A stretch of 64,000 nucleotides of DNA from Thecamonas trahens ATCC 50062 (lineage: Eukaryota; Protista; Apusomonadida): positions 333,919 to 397,918 of the forward strand of contig NW_013657650.1 in the NCBI RefSeq assembly GCF_000142905.1. The letters are read 5' to 3'. The notes under the pieces are model-generated. The model saw only the letters and a program-made list of their open reading frames with translations. It made no database searches and was not told where the DNA came from. A program made the translations under genes and the position numbers. Positions 48,825 to 56,614 of this stretch are shown here, one piece after another (position 1 is the stretch's first letter; each line of letters starts with the position of its first letter).

Positions 48825-49619
48825 TGTGTTGTGAGAGCCAGCGAGGTGTGCGGTCGTGAGGTCGTGGCGGGGCGAGTCGATCGGCGGGTGGTGTGGCATT
48901 GGCGGCTGAGGGGATTTGTGAGAAGGGGGGGGGGGTACCCGGTAGGTGACGGGATCGGGAGTGATCAGGGCGAGATCATTGACAGTGGCATGATGTGGGT
49001 GATGAGGGCGATGACACGGAGCGGAGGGGCGGAAGGGCGGAGGGGCGGCGGGGCGGAGGAGCGGAGGGGGGGGGAGTTGAGCGCTCTCGCGGCCCGCGAG
49101 AGGGTGCGATGATCGTTGCAGAGAAAGCGTCAGTAGAGTTAGTTGTGACCATCAGCGGGTTGGACTAGGAGAGGAGGGGGAAGGAGGGTGTGGCGATGGG
49201 GAGAGCTGGGTTTTCCTCTGGATGTGGAGGGCAGCAGAGTGCAGCAGAATCAAAGATCAAGAGAAAATGTCGGCTAGTGGTGAATGTAGCAGCAGCCACT
49301 CCCTCTCTGTATGCTCATGATTTGTGCTCATTGCGATGACAGGAGACCCCTCTCGCGAGACCTGTCTCTTGCTCTCAGGCTCACGCTCGATGATGCACTG
49401 GAGCTGTGCGTGGCAAACCTAGCAGGTATTCCCCAGCGAGCACCTCCTCCCCCTCCCCATCTCAAACTATTTTTCATCCCAGACCCACCCCCCACCCCCC
49501 ACATGTTCGAATGCTCGCGGGTCATGGTTGGCTTGACACCGGCACCTCGGCACCTCCGCTGCGTCTCTGCTCCCCACCTCACACCTCACGCTCGTGGTGC
49601 ACCTCGACGTACTCCAAGC

Positions 49620-51486
49620 ATGTCCTCTGCACTGCACGGCTTCACCATCTGTGCCACAGGCAAGTTCCCAGTCACTCGCTCAGCGCTCTCCAAGACGCTC
49701 GAAGCGCACGGGGCGACGGTGGCCAGCTCGGTGACCAAGAAGGTATGGAAAACAGGGCGGGGGCGGGTGGGGGGTGTGTGTGGAAAAAAAAATGAATTTC
49801 ATGCACTCCGTCCGTCATGTACTCACCAGGGGAGCAAAACAGGTGACGCATCTGCTGGCCGAGGGCGACAACTCGTCGGCAAAGTACAAGAAGGCTGTGG
49901 CTAATGGCGTGACGATTGTGGATCTGGCGTGGCTGGAGGCGGCGATCGGCCCGCTGGCGGGAGGCGGCAGCGGCAGCGGCGGGGCGCAGCCGTCGCGTCC
50001 GGGAGTGGTCACCCGGCGGTCGACCCGGAAGCGCAAGGCGGCGGCGGGTGCGGCGGCAGCGGATGACGATGACGATGACGAGGACGCGGCTGTTGGTAAG
50101 CCGCTGGCTGGCAAGGTGGTGTGCGTCTCGGGAACGATCTCGCTCGGCAAGCGGGCCGAGGTGGCCAAGATGCTCGAGGATCTCGGGGCGACGGTCTCGG
50201 GGTCGGTGACCAAGGCGACAACGGACTTGCTCTCGGACGGCAACACCGGGAGCTCCAAGTACACCAAGGCGGTTGCGAAGAGCATTCCAATCCACGACGA
50301 GGCGTGGCTGGCGGCGCTTGTGAACGGTAGCGGGAGCGGGAGCGGAGGCAGCGCAACAAGCTCGGTGGCAAGTACGGCCGGGGCGACGGCGGCAGCCAGC
50401 GGTGGGAGCAACAAGAAGCAGAAGACGCTGTCGGGCGCGGCGGCGACGCTGCCTGTGGACGACGCGTGCCAGCTGCAGGGCGCACAGGTTGTGGAAAACT
50501 ACTCGTGCATGCTCAACCAGACCGACATCCGGCGCAACGCCAACAAGTTCTACCGCATCCAGGTGCTCTCGACGCCTGGCCCGGTCTACCATCTGTACAC
50601 GCACTGGGGCCGCGTCGGCGCGCGTGGACAGGACAAGACCCAGCGGTGCTCGTCGCTTGCGGACGCCATCACGGGCTTCAAGAAGAAGTTCTCCGCCAAG
50701 ACGCTCAACTCGTGGGACAACCGGGCGTCGTTTGTCCAGCGGCCGGGCAAGTACCAGCTGATCGGCCTTTCGCACGGCGAGTCTGACGACGACGAGTCTG
50801 ACGACGACGAGTCTGACGAGGGGACCGGCGGTGGTGAAGAGACCGGCGGAGCCGGAGCGAGTGGAGGCGCCGCAGGCAACGACGGCGGCTCTGACGACTA
50901 CCTCTTCTCTGGGCGGCTCAAGTCGGGCGAGCTGCTGTACATCATTGAGAACGACATCTGCGAGGTGGAGGCCGACTGCGTGGTGCATCCGACGGCGTCG
51001 CACATCTCGACGGGCGGGCAGGTCGGGCGGGTGCTTGCGCTCGCCGGCGGAGCCGGGTTCCGCAAGGCCATCAGCGACTTCTCGGGCAGCATCCCGGTCA
51101 ACGGGGCTGTCATCACGAGCGCCGGCGACCTGCCTGCCTCGCACGTGGTGCACGTCAACTCGCCGTCGTTCAACGGGCGTGCGGCCAAGGCGTCGTACGC
51201 CGCGCTGGCCAAGACCATCCACGCTGCGCTGGAGACGGCGTCGGACGCCGGGCTCGTCTCGATTGCCTTTCCGTCGATCGGCTCGGGCGTCAACGGGTTT
51301 CCCAAGGACGGTGCCGCGCGGGTCATCCTCTCGGCCATCGGCGAGTGGTTTTCGGCTGTCGAGGCCGACGGCGAGGAGACCTCGCTCGACGAGGTCATCT
51401 TTGTGCTGTACGACCCAGCGTCGATGGCGTGCTACCGCAACCAATTCCAGGAGATCTCGTCGGGACTCATGGGCCACCTAGAGTGA
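49620..51486 (+). CDS. BRCT-BRCT-WGR-macrodomain protein (macroH2A-type macro domain); intron 49743-49842
   Basis: BRCT1 LHGFTICATGKF...HGATVASSVTKK|VTHLL...KYKKA...IVDLAWL; BRCT2 LAGKVVCVSGTI...SVTKATTDLL...KYTKA...DEAWL; WGR YSCMLNQTDI..NANKFYRIQ..HWGRVG..FKKKFSAKT.NSW..PGKY; macro DCVVHPT..GGQVG..VHVNSP..SIAFPSIGSGVNGFPK. Confidence 0.93.
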
Positions 51487-51581
51487 GTTCCCAACGCAAT
51501 GATGGCCTTAAGTAAAGCGGCGGCGCCGCTGTTGGAGCTATTGCCTCTTTACATGTTGTGTAGTGCTGGGGTGTGTGGCTA

Positions 51582-52940
51582 TTATTGGCCCTGCGGCGGC
51601 TGCTGGCCCTGGCCCTGGGCCTCGTCGTTGACCATGTCGGCGCCATACGAAAAGAGGAAGTTGGCGGCGAGGTCCGGATCCTTGTTGCAGGACATGTAGG
51701 CCTGGACGCAGATGTGGCGAGGGAAGCCAAGAGCCTCGAGCTGCTCGATGTGGCCCTTCTCCTCCTCGGTGACCTGGATGTAATTGACGCCCGGCGGCGG
51801 GGCGCCCATGCCGCCGGCGACGCCACCCAGCTCCTGGTTCATCTGGTCGGTGGCGGCCGAGGCCGCGGCCATCTCGGCCTCGGTGACCGGCTCGTTCATG
51901 AGGGCCAGGAACTCGTCTTGATGGGCCGAGATGAGCTGCAGCAGCTGCGGCTGGGTCTGGCCCAGCTGCTGGAGCATCGGCTGCATCAGCGCCGGGTTCT
52001 GCTGGACTGCATACCGCAGCCGGGTGAACGGCGGCATGGCGCGGAGCGCCGCGGTGAACGCCGCGCCTTCGGTCATCTCGCCGTCGTCGCCGCCGTCGTC
52101 ACCGCCGGCCTCATTCGGCACGCCGCCAACCTCAGCGCTGCCTGTCTGCGGCTGCGCCGGCGTGCCGCCTGCCGCCATCTGCGCCATCAGCTCGGGCGGA
52201 ATGCCGTTAAGCAGGTAGTCGACCGCACGGTCCGGGTTGTTGAACGCGGCACGGAGCGCGACCTCGCACTGATCGCGCGGAAAGCCGAGCGCCATCAGCG
52301 TCTGCACCGCACCCTCTTCCGATGCGCCGGTGACCATCGCCTCTGGGCCCGGCGCGGCGGCGGCGGGAGGAGTCGGGGTGGGAGAAGGAGCAACGGTGGT
52401 GGCGGTGGCGGTGGTGGCGGTGGTGGTGGTGGTCGACGGCGGCGGCGCGGTGTTGGCCGGAGTGGTGTCCATGGGTGCGGGGGTGGGGGCCGAGCTAGAG
52501 CTGGAGGAGGAGACAGACGCCGGCTTGGGCTTTGCCTGCGCAACCTTCTTGGTGGCCATGACAACAAAGAACTCTCCGTCCGCCACGCCGTACGACTCCA
52601 ATGTCTCTGCGTCTGCGAGGATCTTGCCCTTGTACACAAGCTTCTGATGGGCGGCATCAAAGCCCTTTTCACCTTCGATCATCTTCTTGACCTCGAGAAC
52701 CTGGGGCAGGTCATGCGTGCATGAGTGAGGAGGGGGGGGGAGGGGGGGAGATCAGGCTGTGATCAAACCGTTTCACGGAAAAGGTCGCAGTTTGCTGGGC
52801 GACCTGTTCTTCCATTGCCGGCTCGCAACGAGTCGCCAGGTGGGGAGGAGGGGAATGGGAGAGGGAGGACGTACCGTCTGAGAGGGAGTCACCTCGAGGG
52901 TGAACTGGTCCCGGGAGAGGGTCTTGCACAGGACCTTCAT
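51582..52940 (-). CDS. RAD23: UV excision repair protein / proteasome shuttle RAD23; intron 52701-52874
   Basis: UBL MKVLCKTL..FTLEV..T|VLEVKKMIE..QKLVYKGKIL; UBA ALRAAFNNPDRAVDYLLNGIP; STI1 VQQNPALMQPMLQQLGQTQPQL; UBA2 IQVTEEEK..IEQLEALGF..AYMSCNKD.DLAANFL. Confidence 0.97.
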
Positions 52941-54676: not shown

Positions 54677-56614
54677 ATGGGCAGGCGCAAGAAGGCACAA
54701 CGTGCTCGTAGAGAAGGAGGACGGGGTGTGGGTGGCGGTGGTGGAGGTGGAGGGGGACCACCGCTGCCTCCGCTCCATGCGGCGGCGGCAAGCAATGACG
54801 CCAATGCGCTGGCAACGCTGCTCATGACAGCAGGCGAGATCGACGAGAGGACACCACTAAGAAATGCGACACCACTGATGCATGCTTGCTTCCATGGCAA
54901 GTACCTGGCTGCCAGACTGCTGCTTGAAGCTGGCGCATCTGTCAATGCTGCCGATTCCAAGCTCCGGACTCCGCTCCATCACGCGTGCTACTCGCGATCC
55001 AAGCCGGTCATTGCCCTCGTTCTGGCATATGGCGGCGATCCTCGTGCCGAGGACGCCCGCAATCTCAAGCCGCAGGCTGTGTTCAAGGATGGAAAAGAGA
55101 ACGACCTACTTGCCTGGTATCGCTGCAGGCTGAATCCGTCGCTGACGCCTGTCTCCAAGTCCGAGGCCAAGCTGCTGCGCGCGGTCGAGGCCGGCAACCA
55201 GGCCAAGGTGCTGGACAAGCTGGACAAGGGCCGATCGCCGGACGTGGCAGCGCCTGATGGGACGTTTGCACTGGCAATTGCGGTCCGTGCCGGCTCGACC
55301 GACCTCGTCGACCTGCTGCTGCTGCACGGGGCCGACGCGTCGCGGCCGGACGTGCGTGGCAACACGCCGCTGCACTGGGCGGCGATCGAAGGCCGCGTCG
55401 ACATCATGGCGTCGCTGCTGGACATGGGCGCGCTTCTCAATGTGCCGAACAGGGCGTCTGCTTTTGCGCCGCTGCACCTGGCGGCGTCCAAGGGCCACAT
55501 GGCGGCCGTCGACATGCTCATCGCCGCTGGCGCGCGGGCGCTGGTGGTGGACAAAGACGGACAGACGCCGCTGTTCTGGGCGGCGCGCCACGGGCACGCC
55601 GACATTGTGCGGATGCTCATTGATGCTGGGCGCGGAGCTGGCGGTGCCGGCGAGTCGATGCCCGACGTGTACGGCGTGTACCCGTTGCACGCCGCGACGC
55701 TCTCGGGCGAGGCTGAGAGCGTCAAGGTTCTGCTTGGGCACGGGCGGGCGGACGTCAACGTCGCAACCTCGTCGGGTCGGACGGCGCTCCACACTGCCGC
55801 CTACAACGGCGACGCCAATCTTGTCCAGCTGCTGCTTCTCAACGGAGCTCGGCCATCGCACAACCGGCGCGAGGGCGACACGGCGCTGCACATTGTGGTG
55901 AAGCGGATGTGCGATCCGGTCAACTCGGACAAGGCCTCACAGGCTGCGTTCGAGGCCACACTTTCGACCCTCATCGGCGGCACAACTAACCTCAACCCAC
56001 GCAACTCCAAGACTAAGACGCCGCTTGAGGTCATCGACCCGGTACGTGCGTTCAACGTCAAGTCGCCCGAGCGCAAGGCCGCGCTCATGCTCGCCGGCGC
56101 CGGCGCCGACGTCGGTGTCCTCCTCGCCGCGCCCTCGTCGGATGACAAGCGTGAGCTTCACGAGGTCCTCGCCACGCATGTGACGGCAACCAAGCTCGAG
56201 ATGCCCAAGGGCTGGCGGGCCAAGGTCACGTCGACCATCCGCAAGCGCAAGTACTTTGTCAACAAGGCCAAAGGCGAGACGACGTGGCACGATCCGCGAC
56301 TCGAGGCCGCCAAGGAGGCCCGCTCCACCGGGCGCGGCGGACTCGCCGGCCCGTCGGGCGGCGCCATGCTCCTTGACTCCATCACCTGCGCCCTCTGCCT
56401 CGAGCTCATGTACCGTCCGGTCACCACCACCTGCGGTCACTCGTTCTGTCACATCTGTCTCTCCGAAGTCTTCAAGTTCAAGCCCGAGTGTCCGCTCTGC
56501 CGCGCCGTCCTCGACGCCGAGCCGGCGGTCAACACTGTCCTCGCCGAGGTCATCTCCTCGTCGTTCCCGGAGCAGTACGAGGCGCGGCGGCTTGACGCCG
56601 AGGCAATGGCCTGA
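54677..56614 (+). CDS. Ankyrin repeat + WW + C3HC4 RING protein (putative E3 ligase)
   Basis: About 10 ANK repeats (TPLHHAC, GNTPLHWAA, GQTPLFWAA, GRTALHTAA); WW MPKGW....RKYFVNKAKGETTWHDP; RING CALCLELMYRPVTTTCGHSFCHICL....CPLCR. Confidence 0.93.
   Translation: MGRRKKAQRARREGGRGVGGGGGGGGGPPLPPLHAAAASNDANALATLLMTAGEIDERTPLRNATPLMHACFHGKYLAARLLLEAGASVNAADSKLRTPLHHACYSRSKPVIALVLAYGGDPRAEDARNLKPQAVFKDGKENDLLAWYRCRLNPSLTPVSKSEAKLLRAVEAGNQAKVLDKLDKGRSPDVAAPDGTFALAIAVRAGSTDLVDLLLLHGADASRPDVRGNTPLHWAAIEGRVDIMASLLDMGALLNVPNRASAFAPLHLAASKGHMAAVDMLIAAGARALVVDKDGQTPLFWAARHGHADIVRMLIDAGRGAGGAGESMPDVYGVYPLHAATLSGEAESVKVLLGHGRADVNVATSSGRTALHTAAYNGDANLVQLLLLNGARPSHNRREGDTALHIVVKRMCDPVNSDKASQAAFEATLSTLIGGTTNLNPRNSKTKTPLEVIDPVRAFNVKSPERKAALMLAGAGADVGVLLAAPSSDDKRELHEVLATHVTATKLEMPKGWRAKVTSTIRKRKYFVNKAKGETTWHDPRLEAAKEARSTGRGGLAGPSGGAMLLDSITCALCLELMYRPVTTTCGHSFCHICLSEVFKFKPECPLCRAVLDAEPAVNTVLAEVISSSFPEQYEARRLDAEAMA

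What the first reader, a model, noticed from the sequence alone, without database searches (positions are those of the whole stretch)
49620..51486. PARP-type DNA-damage sensor modules fused to a macroH2A-type macrodomain, with no PARP catalytic domain and no histone fold
Seen: two BRCT domains, a complete WGR domain, an acidic Gly-rich linker, then a macrodomain running to the stop. Established: BRCT+WGR is the sensor half of PARP1/2/3-type enzymes and is normally followed by regulatory and catalytic domains. The macrodomain carries macroH2A-like signatures (DI..xxDxVVHPT, GGQVG, HVNSP, SIAFPSIGSGxNGFPK..AA..IL.AI, FVLYD) rather than the NAAN/GGGVD motifs of MacroD hydrolases. The Asp, GG, GSG and aromatic positions used for ADP-ribose binding appear intact, and macroH2A1.1 is known to bind ADP-ribosylated PARP1. 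Inference: a non-catalytic ADP-ribose reader or PARP regulator targeted to DNA breaks. It may be a Rosetta-stone link to the origin of the macroH2A macrodomain before or apart from its fusion to H2A.
Basis: partly seen in the sequence, partly recalled or inferred. Interest (0 to 1): 0.85.

Follow-up and report, generated by a model that had tools for sequence, protein, structure and literature searches.

The report
PARP-type sensor fused to macroH2A macrodomain
A two-exon gene of the flagellate Thecamonas trahens joins the DNA-break-sensing front half of PARP enzymes (two BRCT domains and a WGR domain) to an ADP-ribose-binding macrodomain of the kind found on the histone variant macroH2A, with no enzyme part and no histone part; this rare, uncharacterised fusion links that reader module directly to DNA-damage signalling.

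Summary
Window 49620-51486 (+) is a two-exon gene, equal to a public 588-aa Thecamonas trahens protein that is misnamed 'histone H2A' and 'NAD(+) ADP-ribosyltransferase'. It encodes BRCT-BRCT-WGR-acidic linker-Macro and then stops. It has no PARP regulatory or catalytic domain and no histone fold, and a convergent RAD23 gene starts 95 bp after the stop.

The macrodomain is of the macroH2A type:
- Its best solved relatives are the Capsaspora and human macroH2A1.1 macrodomains (E 1e-31; model TM 0.86-0.92).
- It sits inside a 100/100-supported clade with all H2A-fused macrodomains, apart from PARP14-like and MacroD-type ones.
- The ADP-ribose contact residues D203, G224, G314 and F348 are kept; the MacroD catalytic motif is not.

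The WGR is PARP2/3-like and keeps 10 of 11 PARP2 DNA-contact residues, including the Tyr that reads the 5'-phosphate.

The genome has no true macroH2A but many PARPs and PARGs. Among billions of proteins, only one other (a marine-metagenome ortholog) joins WGR and Macro without a catalytic domain.

Most likely it is a non-catalytic ADP-ribose reader tethered to DNA breaks. This function is inferred, not shown. Its position relative to the H2A fusion is unresolved, and histone-less macroH2A-type macrodomains were already noted in the literature.

The parts
49620..49742 (+). Exon 1 (41 codons): first half of BRCT1, starting at the ATG
   Evidence: Translation. Pfam half-BRCT on this frame. Identical to the N-terminus of public protein P0001.
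49743..49842 (+). Intron, 100 nt, GT..AG, phase 0
   Evidence: Sequence. RNA contig X2 record 13 ends at 49744, and its loose end equals the start of exon 2. The same acceptor position is seen in the metagenome ortholog L039.
49843..51486 (+). Exon 2 (547 codons plus TGA/stop): rest of BRCT1, BRCT2, WGR, linker, Macro
   Evidence: Uninterrupted frame. 100% identical to P0001.
49620..49935 (+). BRCT domain 1 (spans the intron)
   Evidence: Pfam BRCT / PTCB-BRCT. 45% identical to BRCT2 across the splice junction, z about 19 against shuffles.
49936..50094 (+). Disordered linker 1 with a basic patch (RKRK at 50026) followed by an Asp run (50062)
   Evidence: Composition. pLDDT below 50 in the full model.
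50095..50319 (+). BRCT domain 2
   Evidence: Pfam BRCT, profile positions 3-77 of 78. Aligns together with the WGR to PARP1 residues 426-670. pLDDT above 90. 59% identical in the ortholog.
50320..50448 (+). Ser/Gly/Ala-rich disordered linker 2
   Evidence: Composition. pLDDT below 50. 16% identity to the ortholog.
50449..50763 (+). WGR domain, PARP2/PARP3-like
   Evidence: Pfam WGR 6e-23. PDB: PARP3 1.5e-25, PARP2 2e-18, PARP1 2e-10. 10 of 11 PARP2 DNA-contact residues are identical and invariant in the ortholog.
50764..50904 (+). Acidic Gly-rich linker 3 (16 D/E, no K/R)
   Evidence: The acidic run is kept in the ortholog. pLDDT below 50.
50905..51444 (+). Macrodomain of the macroH2A1.1 type
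   Evidence: Pfam Macro 8e-24. PDB phmmer best hits: 7ny6 and human macroH2A1.1 at 1e-31. AF2 pLDDT 91.9, Foldseek TM 0.86-0.92. Clade support 100/100. Residues D412, G433, G523, F561.
51445..51486 (+). Conserved short C-terminal tail and stop codon
   Evidence: 69% identical in the ortholog. Stop at 51484-51486.

Best explanation
This is a real, expressed, two-exon gene of Thecamonas trahens. It encodes a 588-aa protein of independently folded domains joined by flexible linkers: BRCT-BRCT-WGR-acidic linker-Macro.

Shown:
- the domain order;
- the absence of any ADP-ribosyltransferase or histone part;
- the PARP2/3-type WGR with its DNA-contact residues intact;
- the macroH2A1.1-type macrodomain with its ADP-ribose-contact residues intact and the MacroD hydrolase motif absent.

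Inferred:
- The BRCT2-WGR unit docks on nicks, gaps or ends that carry a 5'-phosphate, as it does in PARP2, PARP3 and fungal BRCT-WGR PARPs.
- The tethered macrodomain binds mono-ADP-ribose, or the terminal unit of poly(ADP-ribose), made there by the cell's own PARPs.
- The protein therefore acts as a non-catalytic reader that needs both a break and ADP-ribose.
- By analogy with macroH2A1.1, its likely outputs are holding ADP-ribosylated PARP or repair factors at the lesion, and/or competing with PARPs for the break so that PARP activity and NAD+ use are damped.
For: Gene model and expression:
- the splice is supported by the BRCT1/BRCT2 duplication running across the junction.
- a spliced metatranscriptome contig, and RNA-library contigs that tile WGR-linker-Macro (X1 record 6 covers 50711-51016).

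No catalytic or histone part:
- Pfam.
- No PARP catalytic hit on contig C30.
- Stop codon followed by a convergent RAD23 gene.
- The marine-metagenome ortholog L039 ends the same way on one ORF.

WGR:
- Best solved relatives are PARP3 (1.5e-25) and PARP2.
- The PARP2 contacts N127, N129, K130, Y132, W151, R153, Q159, K179, K183 and Y201 (PMC6294510) are all identical here and in the ortholog.
- The BRCT of fungal BRCT-WGR PARPs binds damaged DNA (PMC13507078).

Macro:
- phmmer against PDB gives 1e-31 to macroH2A1.1, against 1e-9 to 1e-13 for single PARP14 and MacroD domains.
- AF2 model pLDDT 91.9. Foldseek top hits are macroH2A1.1 at rmsd 1.2-1.6 A.
- Clade support is 100/100.
- D203, G224, G314 and F348 equivalents are kept. 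G224E is the standard PAR-binding-dead mutant (PMC12343833).
- The MacroD motif is present in the genome's other macrodomains but absent here.

Context:
- The genome has many PARP catalytic loci, three PARG loci and no macroH2A.
- macroH2A1.1 binds ADP-ribosylated PARP1 and inhibits it (PMC12551714).
- Domains are conserved (55-71% identity) and linkers are not (16-38%) between the two family members.
- The full model shows three confident domains and disordered linkers, pTM 0.46.
Against: - There is no biochemical or cell-biological data for this protein or its ortholog.
- macroH2A1.2 and macroH2A2 share the fold without binding ADP-ribose, so binding rests on a handful of conserved residues.
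- Position 315 (Arg in the human sequence) is Val here, and the domain has a 4-residue acidic insertion and a C-terminal tail of unknown effect.
- RNA support comes from low-depth metatranscriptome contigs of a near-identical organism, not from a Thecamonas culture, and no single contig spans the whole gene.
- Nuclear location is only suggested by a basic patch.
- The family has only two known members, so the constraint is measured on one pair.
- The proposed outputs (retention of partners, PARP damping) are pure analogy.
Confidence: 0.6

Rival explanations
1. It is a break-targeted eraser. The macrodomain hydrolyses mono-ADP-ribose (or O-acetyl-ADP-ribose) from proteins at the lesion, and BRCT-WGR only delivers it.
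For: Macrodomains of several classes are hydrolases. Multi-macro, PARP14-like proteins are the next nearest group in the tree, and, from my own knowledge, PARP14 and PARP9 macro1 were recently shown to hydrolyse ADP-ribose. The pocket-forming Gly-rich loops are intact.
Against: The MacroD-type catalytic positions (first Asn of NAAN, Asp of GGG[VI]D, the following His) read His, Gly and Ala here, exactly as in macroH2A1.1-type domains. Four other macrodomains of the same genome cluster outside the macroH2A-type clade, and three of them show the full MacroD motif and could do that job. The nearest solved relatives are the non-catalytic macroH2A1.1 domains.
Confidence: 0.12
2. It is mainly a decoy. 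It occupies 5'-phosphorylated breaks with a PARP-like sensor that cannot signal, so it competes with PARPs. The macrodomain would be structural or bind something other than ADP-ribose.
For: The complete WGR DNA-contact set is kept without the HD/ART domains it normally activates. The macroH2A1.2 and macroH2A2 macrodomains show that this fold can lose ADP-ribose binding (PMC12551714).
Against: The macrodomain is the best-conserved part of the protein (71% against 55-59% for WGR and BRCT2). The sequence follows the binding isoform 1.1 (GG-x-VG, GSG, aromatic) rather than 1.2.
Confidence: 0.12
3. It reads ADP-ribosylated DNA ends. The WGR finds the break and the macrodomain binds ADP-ribose attached to the terminal phosphate by PARP2/3-type enzymes.
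For: The WGR is of the PARP2/3 type. PARP2 is reported to ADP-ribosylate DNA (abstract of PMC8190142). The 47-residue flexible linker would let the macrodomain reach the same end.
Against: There is no direct evidence. An ADP-ribosylated 5'-phosphate would probably block the Tyr-phosphate contact the WGR uses (PMC6294510). DNA ADP-ribosylation is not known in apusomonads.
Confidence: 0.06
4. It is a gene-model artefact: two neighbouring genes (a BRCT-WGR fragment and a macrodomain gene) are read as one, or it is a decaying PARP pseudogene.
For: The public names are inconsistent ('histone H2A', 'NAD(+) ADP-ribosyltransferase'). No single RNA contig covers the whole gene.
Against: There is one uninterrupted 547-codon frame from BRCT1 to the Macro stop in Thecamonas, and again in an ortholog only 51-56% identical. 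The intron position is conserved. RNA contigs bridge the WGR end, linker and Macro start. Domains are conserved far more than linkers. There is no room for more exons before the convergent RAD23 gene.
Confidence: 0.02

Closest known systems
macroH2A1.1 (histone variant; human and Capsaspora macrodomain structures 1zr3, 3iid, 7ny6)
   Same: The macrodomain is 38-41% identical and shares the same clade, fold (TM about 0.9) and ADP-ribose-contact residues. The module is likewise held on DNA or chromatin by a separate N-terminal part through a flexible linker.
   Different: The tether is BRCT-BRCT-WGR instead of an H2A histone fold, so it would sit at breaks rather than in nucleosomes. There is no H2A docking or linker region, and the protein has an extra acidic loop and a C-terminal tail.
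PARP2 / PARP3 and BRCT-WGR PARPs of fungi and protists (Af-PARP1; Euglena longa P0031, Cochliopodium P0037)
   Same: The order BRCT-(BRCT)-WGR is the same. The WGR is 44-53% identical to animal PARP3, and the residues that contact the 5'-phosphate side and 3' side of a nick are kept.
   Different: The helical regulatory domain and the ADP-ribosyltransferase domain are replaced by an acidic linker and a macrodomain. It cannot write ADP-ribose.
Macro-PARPs (PARP9, PARP14, PARP15) and the Cantina marsupialis PARP1-like protein with a C-terminal Macro (P0015)
   Same: They combine PARP-family parts with macrodomains in one chain. The Cantina macrodomain also falls in the macroH2A-type clade.
   Different: Those keep a catalytic domain. 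PARP14-like macrodomains lie outside the macroH2A-type clade, and those proteins lack WGR-based break sensing (except Cantina).
ALC1/CHD1L and other macrodomain readers recruited to DNA damage (from my own knowledge)
   Same: A macrodomain reads PARP-made ADP-ribose at DNA lesions.
   Different: ALC1 reaches lesions only through PAR and carries a remodeller ATPase. This protein has its own DNA-break sensor and no effector enzyme.
Histone-less macroH2A-type macrodomain proteins from metagenomes: SAP-HeH/LEM-Macro (P0038, P0048, P0069, P0086) and BRCT-Macro (P0022)
   Same: They share the macrodomain clade and the logic of a DNA- or chromatin-binding N-terminus plus a C-terminal macroH2A-type Macro.
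   Different: The tethering modules differ, and none has a WGR.

Membership tests
macroH2A histone variants | N-terminal H2A histone fold | tested here: not met
   No Histone or Histone_H2A_C Pfam hit. The sponge macroH2A query matches this gene only over its macro part, residues 195-389.
macroH2A histone variants | C-terminal macrodomain of the macroH2A type | tested here: met
macroH2A-like macrodomain class | Groups with macroH2A macrodomains to the exclusion of MacroD-type and PARP14-like domains | tested here: met
   Clade of 34 rows with 100/100 support and branch length 0.87. PDB ranking by sequence and by fold.
macroH2A-like macrodomain class | ADP-ribose contact residues of the binding isoform (D203, G224, G314, F348 in 369-aa numbering) | tested here: met
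   D412, G433, G523 and F561 in P0001. The same residues are in the ortholog.
macroH2A-like macrodomain class | Measured binding of ADP-ribose or PAR | not testable with these tools
   Needs ITC or pull-down.
PARP1/2/3-type ADP-ribosyltransferases | ART catalytic domain (PF00644) with helical regulatory domain (PF02877) | tested here: not met
   No hit in the protein. None of the 20 PARP catalytic loci found in the genome (17 over the Pfam cut-off) lies on contig C30. The ORF ends 95 bp before a convergent gene.
PARP1/2/3-type ADP-ribosyltransferases | WGR domain with DNA-break contact residues | tested here: met
   Pfam 6e-23. 10 of 11 PARP2 contact residues are identical.
MacroD-type ADP-ribosylhydrolases | NAAN ... 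GGG[VI]D ... H catalytic motif | tested here: not met
   It reads HPTAS ... GGQVG ... A. The MacroD-type paralogs of the same genome clearly keep the motif in three cases: L001, L003, and L002 in the part recovered.
BRCT-domain proteins | BRCT fold, here as a tandem duplicate | tested here: met
   Pfam BRCT 4e-20 with two stretches. Internal duplication. pLDDT above 90 for BRCT2.

The most novel reading that the evidence does not exclude
The macroH2A-type macrodomain is not intrinsically a histone appendage. It is a portable reader of PARP-made ADP-ribose that evolution has tethered to DNA or chromatin at least four separate ways: the H2A fold, SAP-HeH, BRCT alone, and BRCT-WGR/PARP1. The apusomonad protein would then be a free-standing coincidence detector of 'break plus ADP-ribose'. 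It would also show that the macroH2A1.1-PARP functional axis existed outside, and possibly before, the histone fusion.
Probability: 0.35. Interest if true: 0.75.

Novelty: new variant of a known kind. Interest (0 to 1): 0.55.

Why it matters
macroH2A1.1 is the best-known chromatin-bound ADP-ribose reader, and its link to PARP1 is studied mostly in vertebrates. Where its macrodomain came from is an open question.

This gene is a natural fusion in a sister lineage of opisthokonts (own knowledge of eukaryote phylogeny). The organism lacks macroH2A itself. The fusion places the same reader module on the DNA-break sensor of PARP enzymes. That gives independent, 'guilt-by-fusion' support for a direct reader-PARP-DNA-damage connection.

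It also offers a small soluble protein in which break binding and ADP-ribose reading can be separated by point mutations. Finally, it corrects two misleading database names.

Tried and rejected
- WGR-domain tree (89 rows, 112 columns): unresolved. Even the two family members did not pair, so no donor PARP lineage can be named.
- Scan of JGI metagenome contigs: only two distant macrodomain loci (31-32% identity) and no new family member.
- Word-based full-length search: swamped by low-complexity words. Searches by macro region and by profile and the exhaustive representative search were used instead.
- First AU test holding only H2A-labelled rows together: rejected, but meaningless, because several rows without a detected H2A fold sit within or next to the H2A-fused groups and some are fragments or shorter isoforms of macroH2A (for example P0130, whose cluster also holds a 372-aa form).
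- I first read tblastn as showing the ortholog to be intronless from residue 5. One search showed the upstream stretch is a polypyrimidine tract plus CAG acceptor, so exon 1 is off that contig. Corrected in the notebook.
- Guberovic et al. 2021 (NSMB) is not held. The relevant figure of Grau-Bove et al. is not readable as text, so I cannot say whether this exact architecture is drawn there.
- HPF1 search: blank, but without a positive control, so uninformative.
- Earlier findings of the scan: nothing near this place or by words.
Full report
**What is there**

The window is GC-rich eukaryotic DNA (about 64% GC). On the + strand an ATG at 49620 opens a 41-codon exon. That exon ends at a GT donor at 49743. 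A CAG acceptor ends at 49842, and a 547-codon frame runs from 49843 to the stop at 51484-51486.

All searches used exon 2 (and the exon-1 frame) by reference, so the joined-model search step was left out. However, the exon-2 search returned a public 588-aa protein of Thecamonas trahens ATCC 50062 (P0001). It is 100% identical over exon 2, and its N-terminus is exon 1. The model therefore equals the existing annotation.

Three observations support the splice:
- BRCT1, read across the junction, aligns with BRCT2 over 73 columns with 33 identities (score 149 against 31.5 +/- 6.2 for shuffles). The two BRCTs are a tandem duplicate and the junction restores the fold.
- A metatranscriptome contig (X2 record 13) lies on 49608-49744 and continues with 14 letters that equal the start of exon 2.
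- The marine-metagenome ortholog has a polypyrimidine tract and CAG acceptor at exactly the same codon.

**Domains**

Pfam finds BRCT (two stretches, 4e-20), WGR (6e-23) and Macro (8e-24), and nothing else. There is no PARP_reg, no PARP catalytic domain and no histone family.

An AlphaFold model of exon 2 gives three confident domains with pLDDT above 90: BRCT2, WGR and Macro. They are separated by linkers with pLDDT below 50, and pTM is 0.46, so the domains appear flexibly linked rather than packed together.

The linkers differ in character:
- Linker 1 is basic and then acidic (RKRK followed by an Asp run).
- Linker 2 is Ser/Gly/Ala-rich.
- Linker 3 is strongly acidic and Gly-rich (16 D/E and no K/R in 47 residues).

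The gene cannot continue downstream. A convergent RAD23 homolog (UBL-UBA-XPC-binding-UBA) ends 95 bp after the stop. None of the PARP catalytic loci found in the genome is on this contig.

**The macrodomain**

By sequence against all PDB chains, the best matches are:

| Match | E-value |
|---|---|
| Capsaspora macroH2A macrodomain (7ny6) | 1.5e-31 |
| Human macroH2A1.1 | 3e-31 |
| macroH2A1.2 | 1e-24 |
| macroH2A2 | 6e-19 |
| Single PARP14 macrodomains | 1e-9 to 1e-12 |
| MacroD1/2 | 1e-13 |
| Af1521 | 1e-6 |

A model built on 35 relatives has pLDDT 91.9. Its Foldseek neighbours come in the same order, with macroH2A1.1 at TM 0.86-0.92 and rmsd 1.2-1.6 A.

In a careful maximum-likelihood tree of 64 macrodomains, the Thecamonas protein and its ortholog lie inside a clade with 100/100 support. 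That clade holds every H2A-fused macrodomain sampled (vertebrates, sponges, a ctenophore, molluscs, crustaceans). PARP14-like multi-macro proteins and four other macrodomains of the Thecamonas genome lie outside it.

Those paralogs are of the MacroD type. The NAAN...GGG[IV]D...IH motif is plain in three of them, whereas this gene reads HPTAS...GGQVG...LA.

In the numbering of a 369-aa macroH2A1.1, positions D203, G224, G314 and F348 correspond to D412, G433, G523 and F561 here. All four are conserved, and they are also conserved in the ortholog. That these four are the ADP-ribose contacts is my own recollection of the macroH2A1.1 literature. Only G224E is documented in a paper I could read, as the PAR-binding-deficient mutant (PMC12343833). 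The loop follows the ADP-ribose-binding isoform 1.1 (GG-x-VG).

**The WGR and BRCT part**

The WGR is closest to human PARP3 (1.5e-25), then PARP2 (2e-18), then PARP1 (2e-10). It is 44-53% identical to animal PARP3 WGRs.

The PARP2-DNA crystal structures name the contact residues (PMC6294510):
- Y201 reads the 5'-phosphate.
- K130, K183, K179 and Y132 lie on the 5' side.
- W151 stacks on the terminal ribose.
- R153, N127 and N128 lie on the 3' side.
- Q159 and N129 complete the set.

I mapped these through the alignment, and every identity checks against the numbering offset. Ten of the eleven are identical here: N273, N275, K276, Y278, W296, R298, Q304, K323, K327 and Y345. The eleventh, N128, is Ala, and the N128A mutant behaved like wild type in that paper. 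All ten are also invariant in the ortholog.

BRCT2 plus WGR align collinearly with PARP1 residues 426-670. The order BRCT-BRCT-WGR recurs in full PARP enzymes of Euglena longa and Cochliopodium minus. In fungal BRCT-WGR PARPs the BRCT domain contributes to binding of gapped and other damaged DNA (PMC13507078).

The nearest paralog within Thecamonas is a BRCT-WGR-PARP gene on contig C16, at only 33% identity. This is therefore not a recent truncation of a resident PARP.

**Distribution**

An exhaustive HMMER pass over 1.84 billion representative proteins found one other full-length relative: P0002, 513 aa, 56% identical. A profile search over 5.8 billion clusters again found only these two proteins joining WGR and Macro.

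P0002 lies on a 7.8-kb Tara Oceans marine-metagenome contig. That contig carries the exon-2 equivalent as one uninterrupted ORF with the same end. It has a different neighbour, a BET bromodomain gene.

Between the two family members, identity by region is as follows:

| Region | Identity |
|---|---|
| Macro | 71% |
| C-terminal tail | 69% |
| BRCT2 | 59% |
| WGR | 55% |
| Linkers | 16-38% |

This pattern is what a functional multi-domain protein would show.

RNA-library contigs from environmental metatranscriptomes, over 99% alike, tile 50129-51220. They bridge the WGR end, the linker and the Macro start. Depth is low and no single contig spans the gene.

**Genome context**

Thecamonas has 17 loci that pass the PARP catalytic cut-off, and four of them sit next to a WGR. 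It has three PARG loci and six macrodomain loci.

A sponge macroH2A used as query hits ordinary H2A genes with its histone part. Its macro part hits this gene best (1.6e-30, 41% identity), with the next macrodomain at 2.5e-14. No macro locus lies beside an H2A fold. The genome therefore has writers, erasers and this macroH2A-type reader, but no macroH2A.

**Mechanism (inference)**

By homology, BRCT2-WGR should bind 5'-phosphorylated nicks, gaps or ends. The macrodomain should bind ADP-ribose.

macroH2A1.1 recruits ADP-ribosylated PARP1 and SirT7, and at high levels it inhibits PARP1 and spares NAD+ (PMC12551714). Its PAR binding also supports XRCC1 recruitment and single-strand-break repair (PMC12343833).

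The most economical reading is a soluble, break-targeted counterpart of that activity. The protein would occupy the lesion and hold or cap the ADP-ribose signal made by resident PARPs, either stabilising repair assemblies or limiting PARP output. The acidic linker could also fold back on the basic DNA-binding surfaces as an autoinhibitor, but that is speculation. Rivals (eraser, pure decoy, reader of ADP-ribosylated DNA ends, artefact) are scored in their own sections.

**Evolution and novelty**

Inside the macroH2A-type clade the base is a polytomy of six lineages:
- the apusomonad pair;
- a BRCT-Macro protein (P0022, a complete ORF on its contig);
- a SAP-HeH/LEM-Macro group;
- the Cantina marsupialis PARP1-like protein with a C-terminal Macro, joined to one H2A-fused sequence;
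- a protist H2A-fused pair;
- the animal macroH2A group.

A tree that keeps all H2A-fused sequences (and the rows that grouped with them) together, apart from the histone-less architectures, is not rejected (p-AU 0.21). I named that group after seeing the tree. The data therefore allow, but do not show, that this gene branched apart from the histone fusion.

Three papers bear on the novelty:
[quoted passage not shown] Thecamonas was in their data set, and they infer macroH2A in LECA.
- The Buschbeck group places the fusion at the origin of animals.
- A 2026 review states that the macroH2A-like reader class has no fungal orthologues.

I found no paper that describes BRCT-WGR-Macro or proposes a function for it. 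I rate it a new variant of a known kind. The parts and the idea of histone-less relatives are known. The combination with a PARP-type break sensor, its extreme rarity and its functional implication are not.

Noticed in passing
window 51582-52682 (-): A RAD23 homolog (ubiquitin-like, two UBA domains, XPC-binding domain) lies convergent to the gene, with only 95 bp between the two stop codons. One contig of run X10 (kind unknown) spans both 3' ends (50743-51661). Two DNA-repair-related genes therefore sit tail to tail, but the ortholog's contig has a BET bromodomain gene there instead.
   Followed up: partly
window 49620-51486 / protein P0001: The public names are misleading. NCBI calls the protein 'histone H2A' and UniRef calls it 'NAD(+) ADP-ribosyltransferase', yet it has neither a histone fold nor a transferase domain.
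   Followed up: yes
P0038, P0048, P0069, P0086 (L043 for P0069): A group of metagenome/metatranscriptome proteins has SAP and HeH/LEM-type DNA-binding motifs followed by a macroH2A-type macrodomain (clade support 100/98). The source organisms are unknown.
   Followed up: partly
P0022 (L042:111-1076): A complete 321-aa ORF encodes a single BRCT directly followed by a macroH2A-type macrodomain, with no WGR.
   Followed up: partly
P0015 (EukProt, Cantina marsupialis transcript): A PARP1-like protein (zf-PARP, PADR1, BRCT, WGR, regulatory and catalytic domains) carries an extra C-terminal macrodomain that falls, on a long branch, in the macroH2A-type clade. It could be a genuine writer-reader fusion or a chimeric Trinity transcript.
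   Followed up: no
G000 genome-wide: Thecamonas has a large ADP-ribosylation toolkit: 17 PARP catalytic loci over the cut-off, 8 WGR loci (4 beside a catalytic domain, 4 not), 6 macrodomain loci (at least 3 clearly MacroD-type) and 3 PARG loci. HPF1 was not detected, but that search had no positive control.
   Followed up: partly
G000:C2:214153-214662 and G000:C1:307368-307733: Two H2A-like loci have unusually long open frames or matches. The C2 match covers sponge macroH2A residues 23-193 (histone fold plus part of the linker) with one in-frame TGA. The C1 locus has a 307-aa open frame. Neither has a macrodomain nearby.
   Followed up: no
P0058, P0009: Some metagenome proteins carry three or four tandem WGR domains. 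P0058 has four WGRs before the regulatory and catalytic domains.
   Followed up: no
L039:1-120: The ortholog's contig starts in a (GAGGATGAA)n simple repeat inside what should be the first intron. This probably explains why the assembly stops there and exon 1 is missing.
   Followed up: partly
window 54677-56614 (+): A gene encodes ankyrin repeats, a WW domain and a C-terminal RING finger, making it a putative E3 ligase.
   Followed up: no
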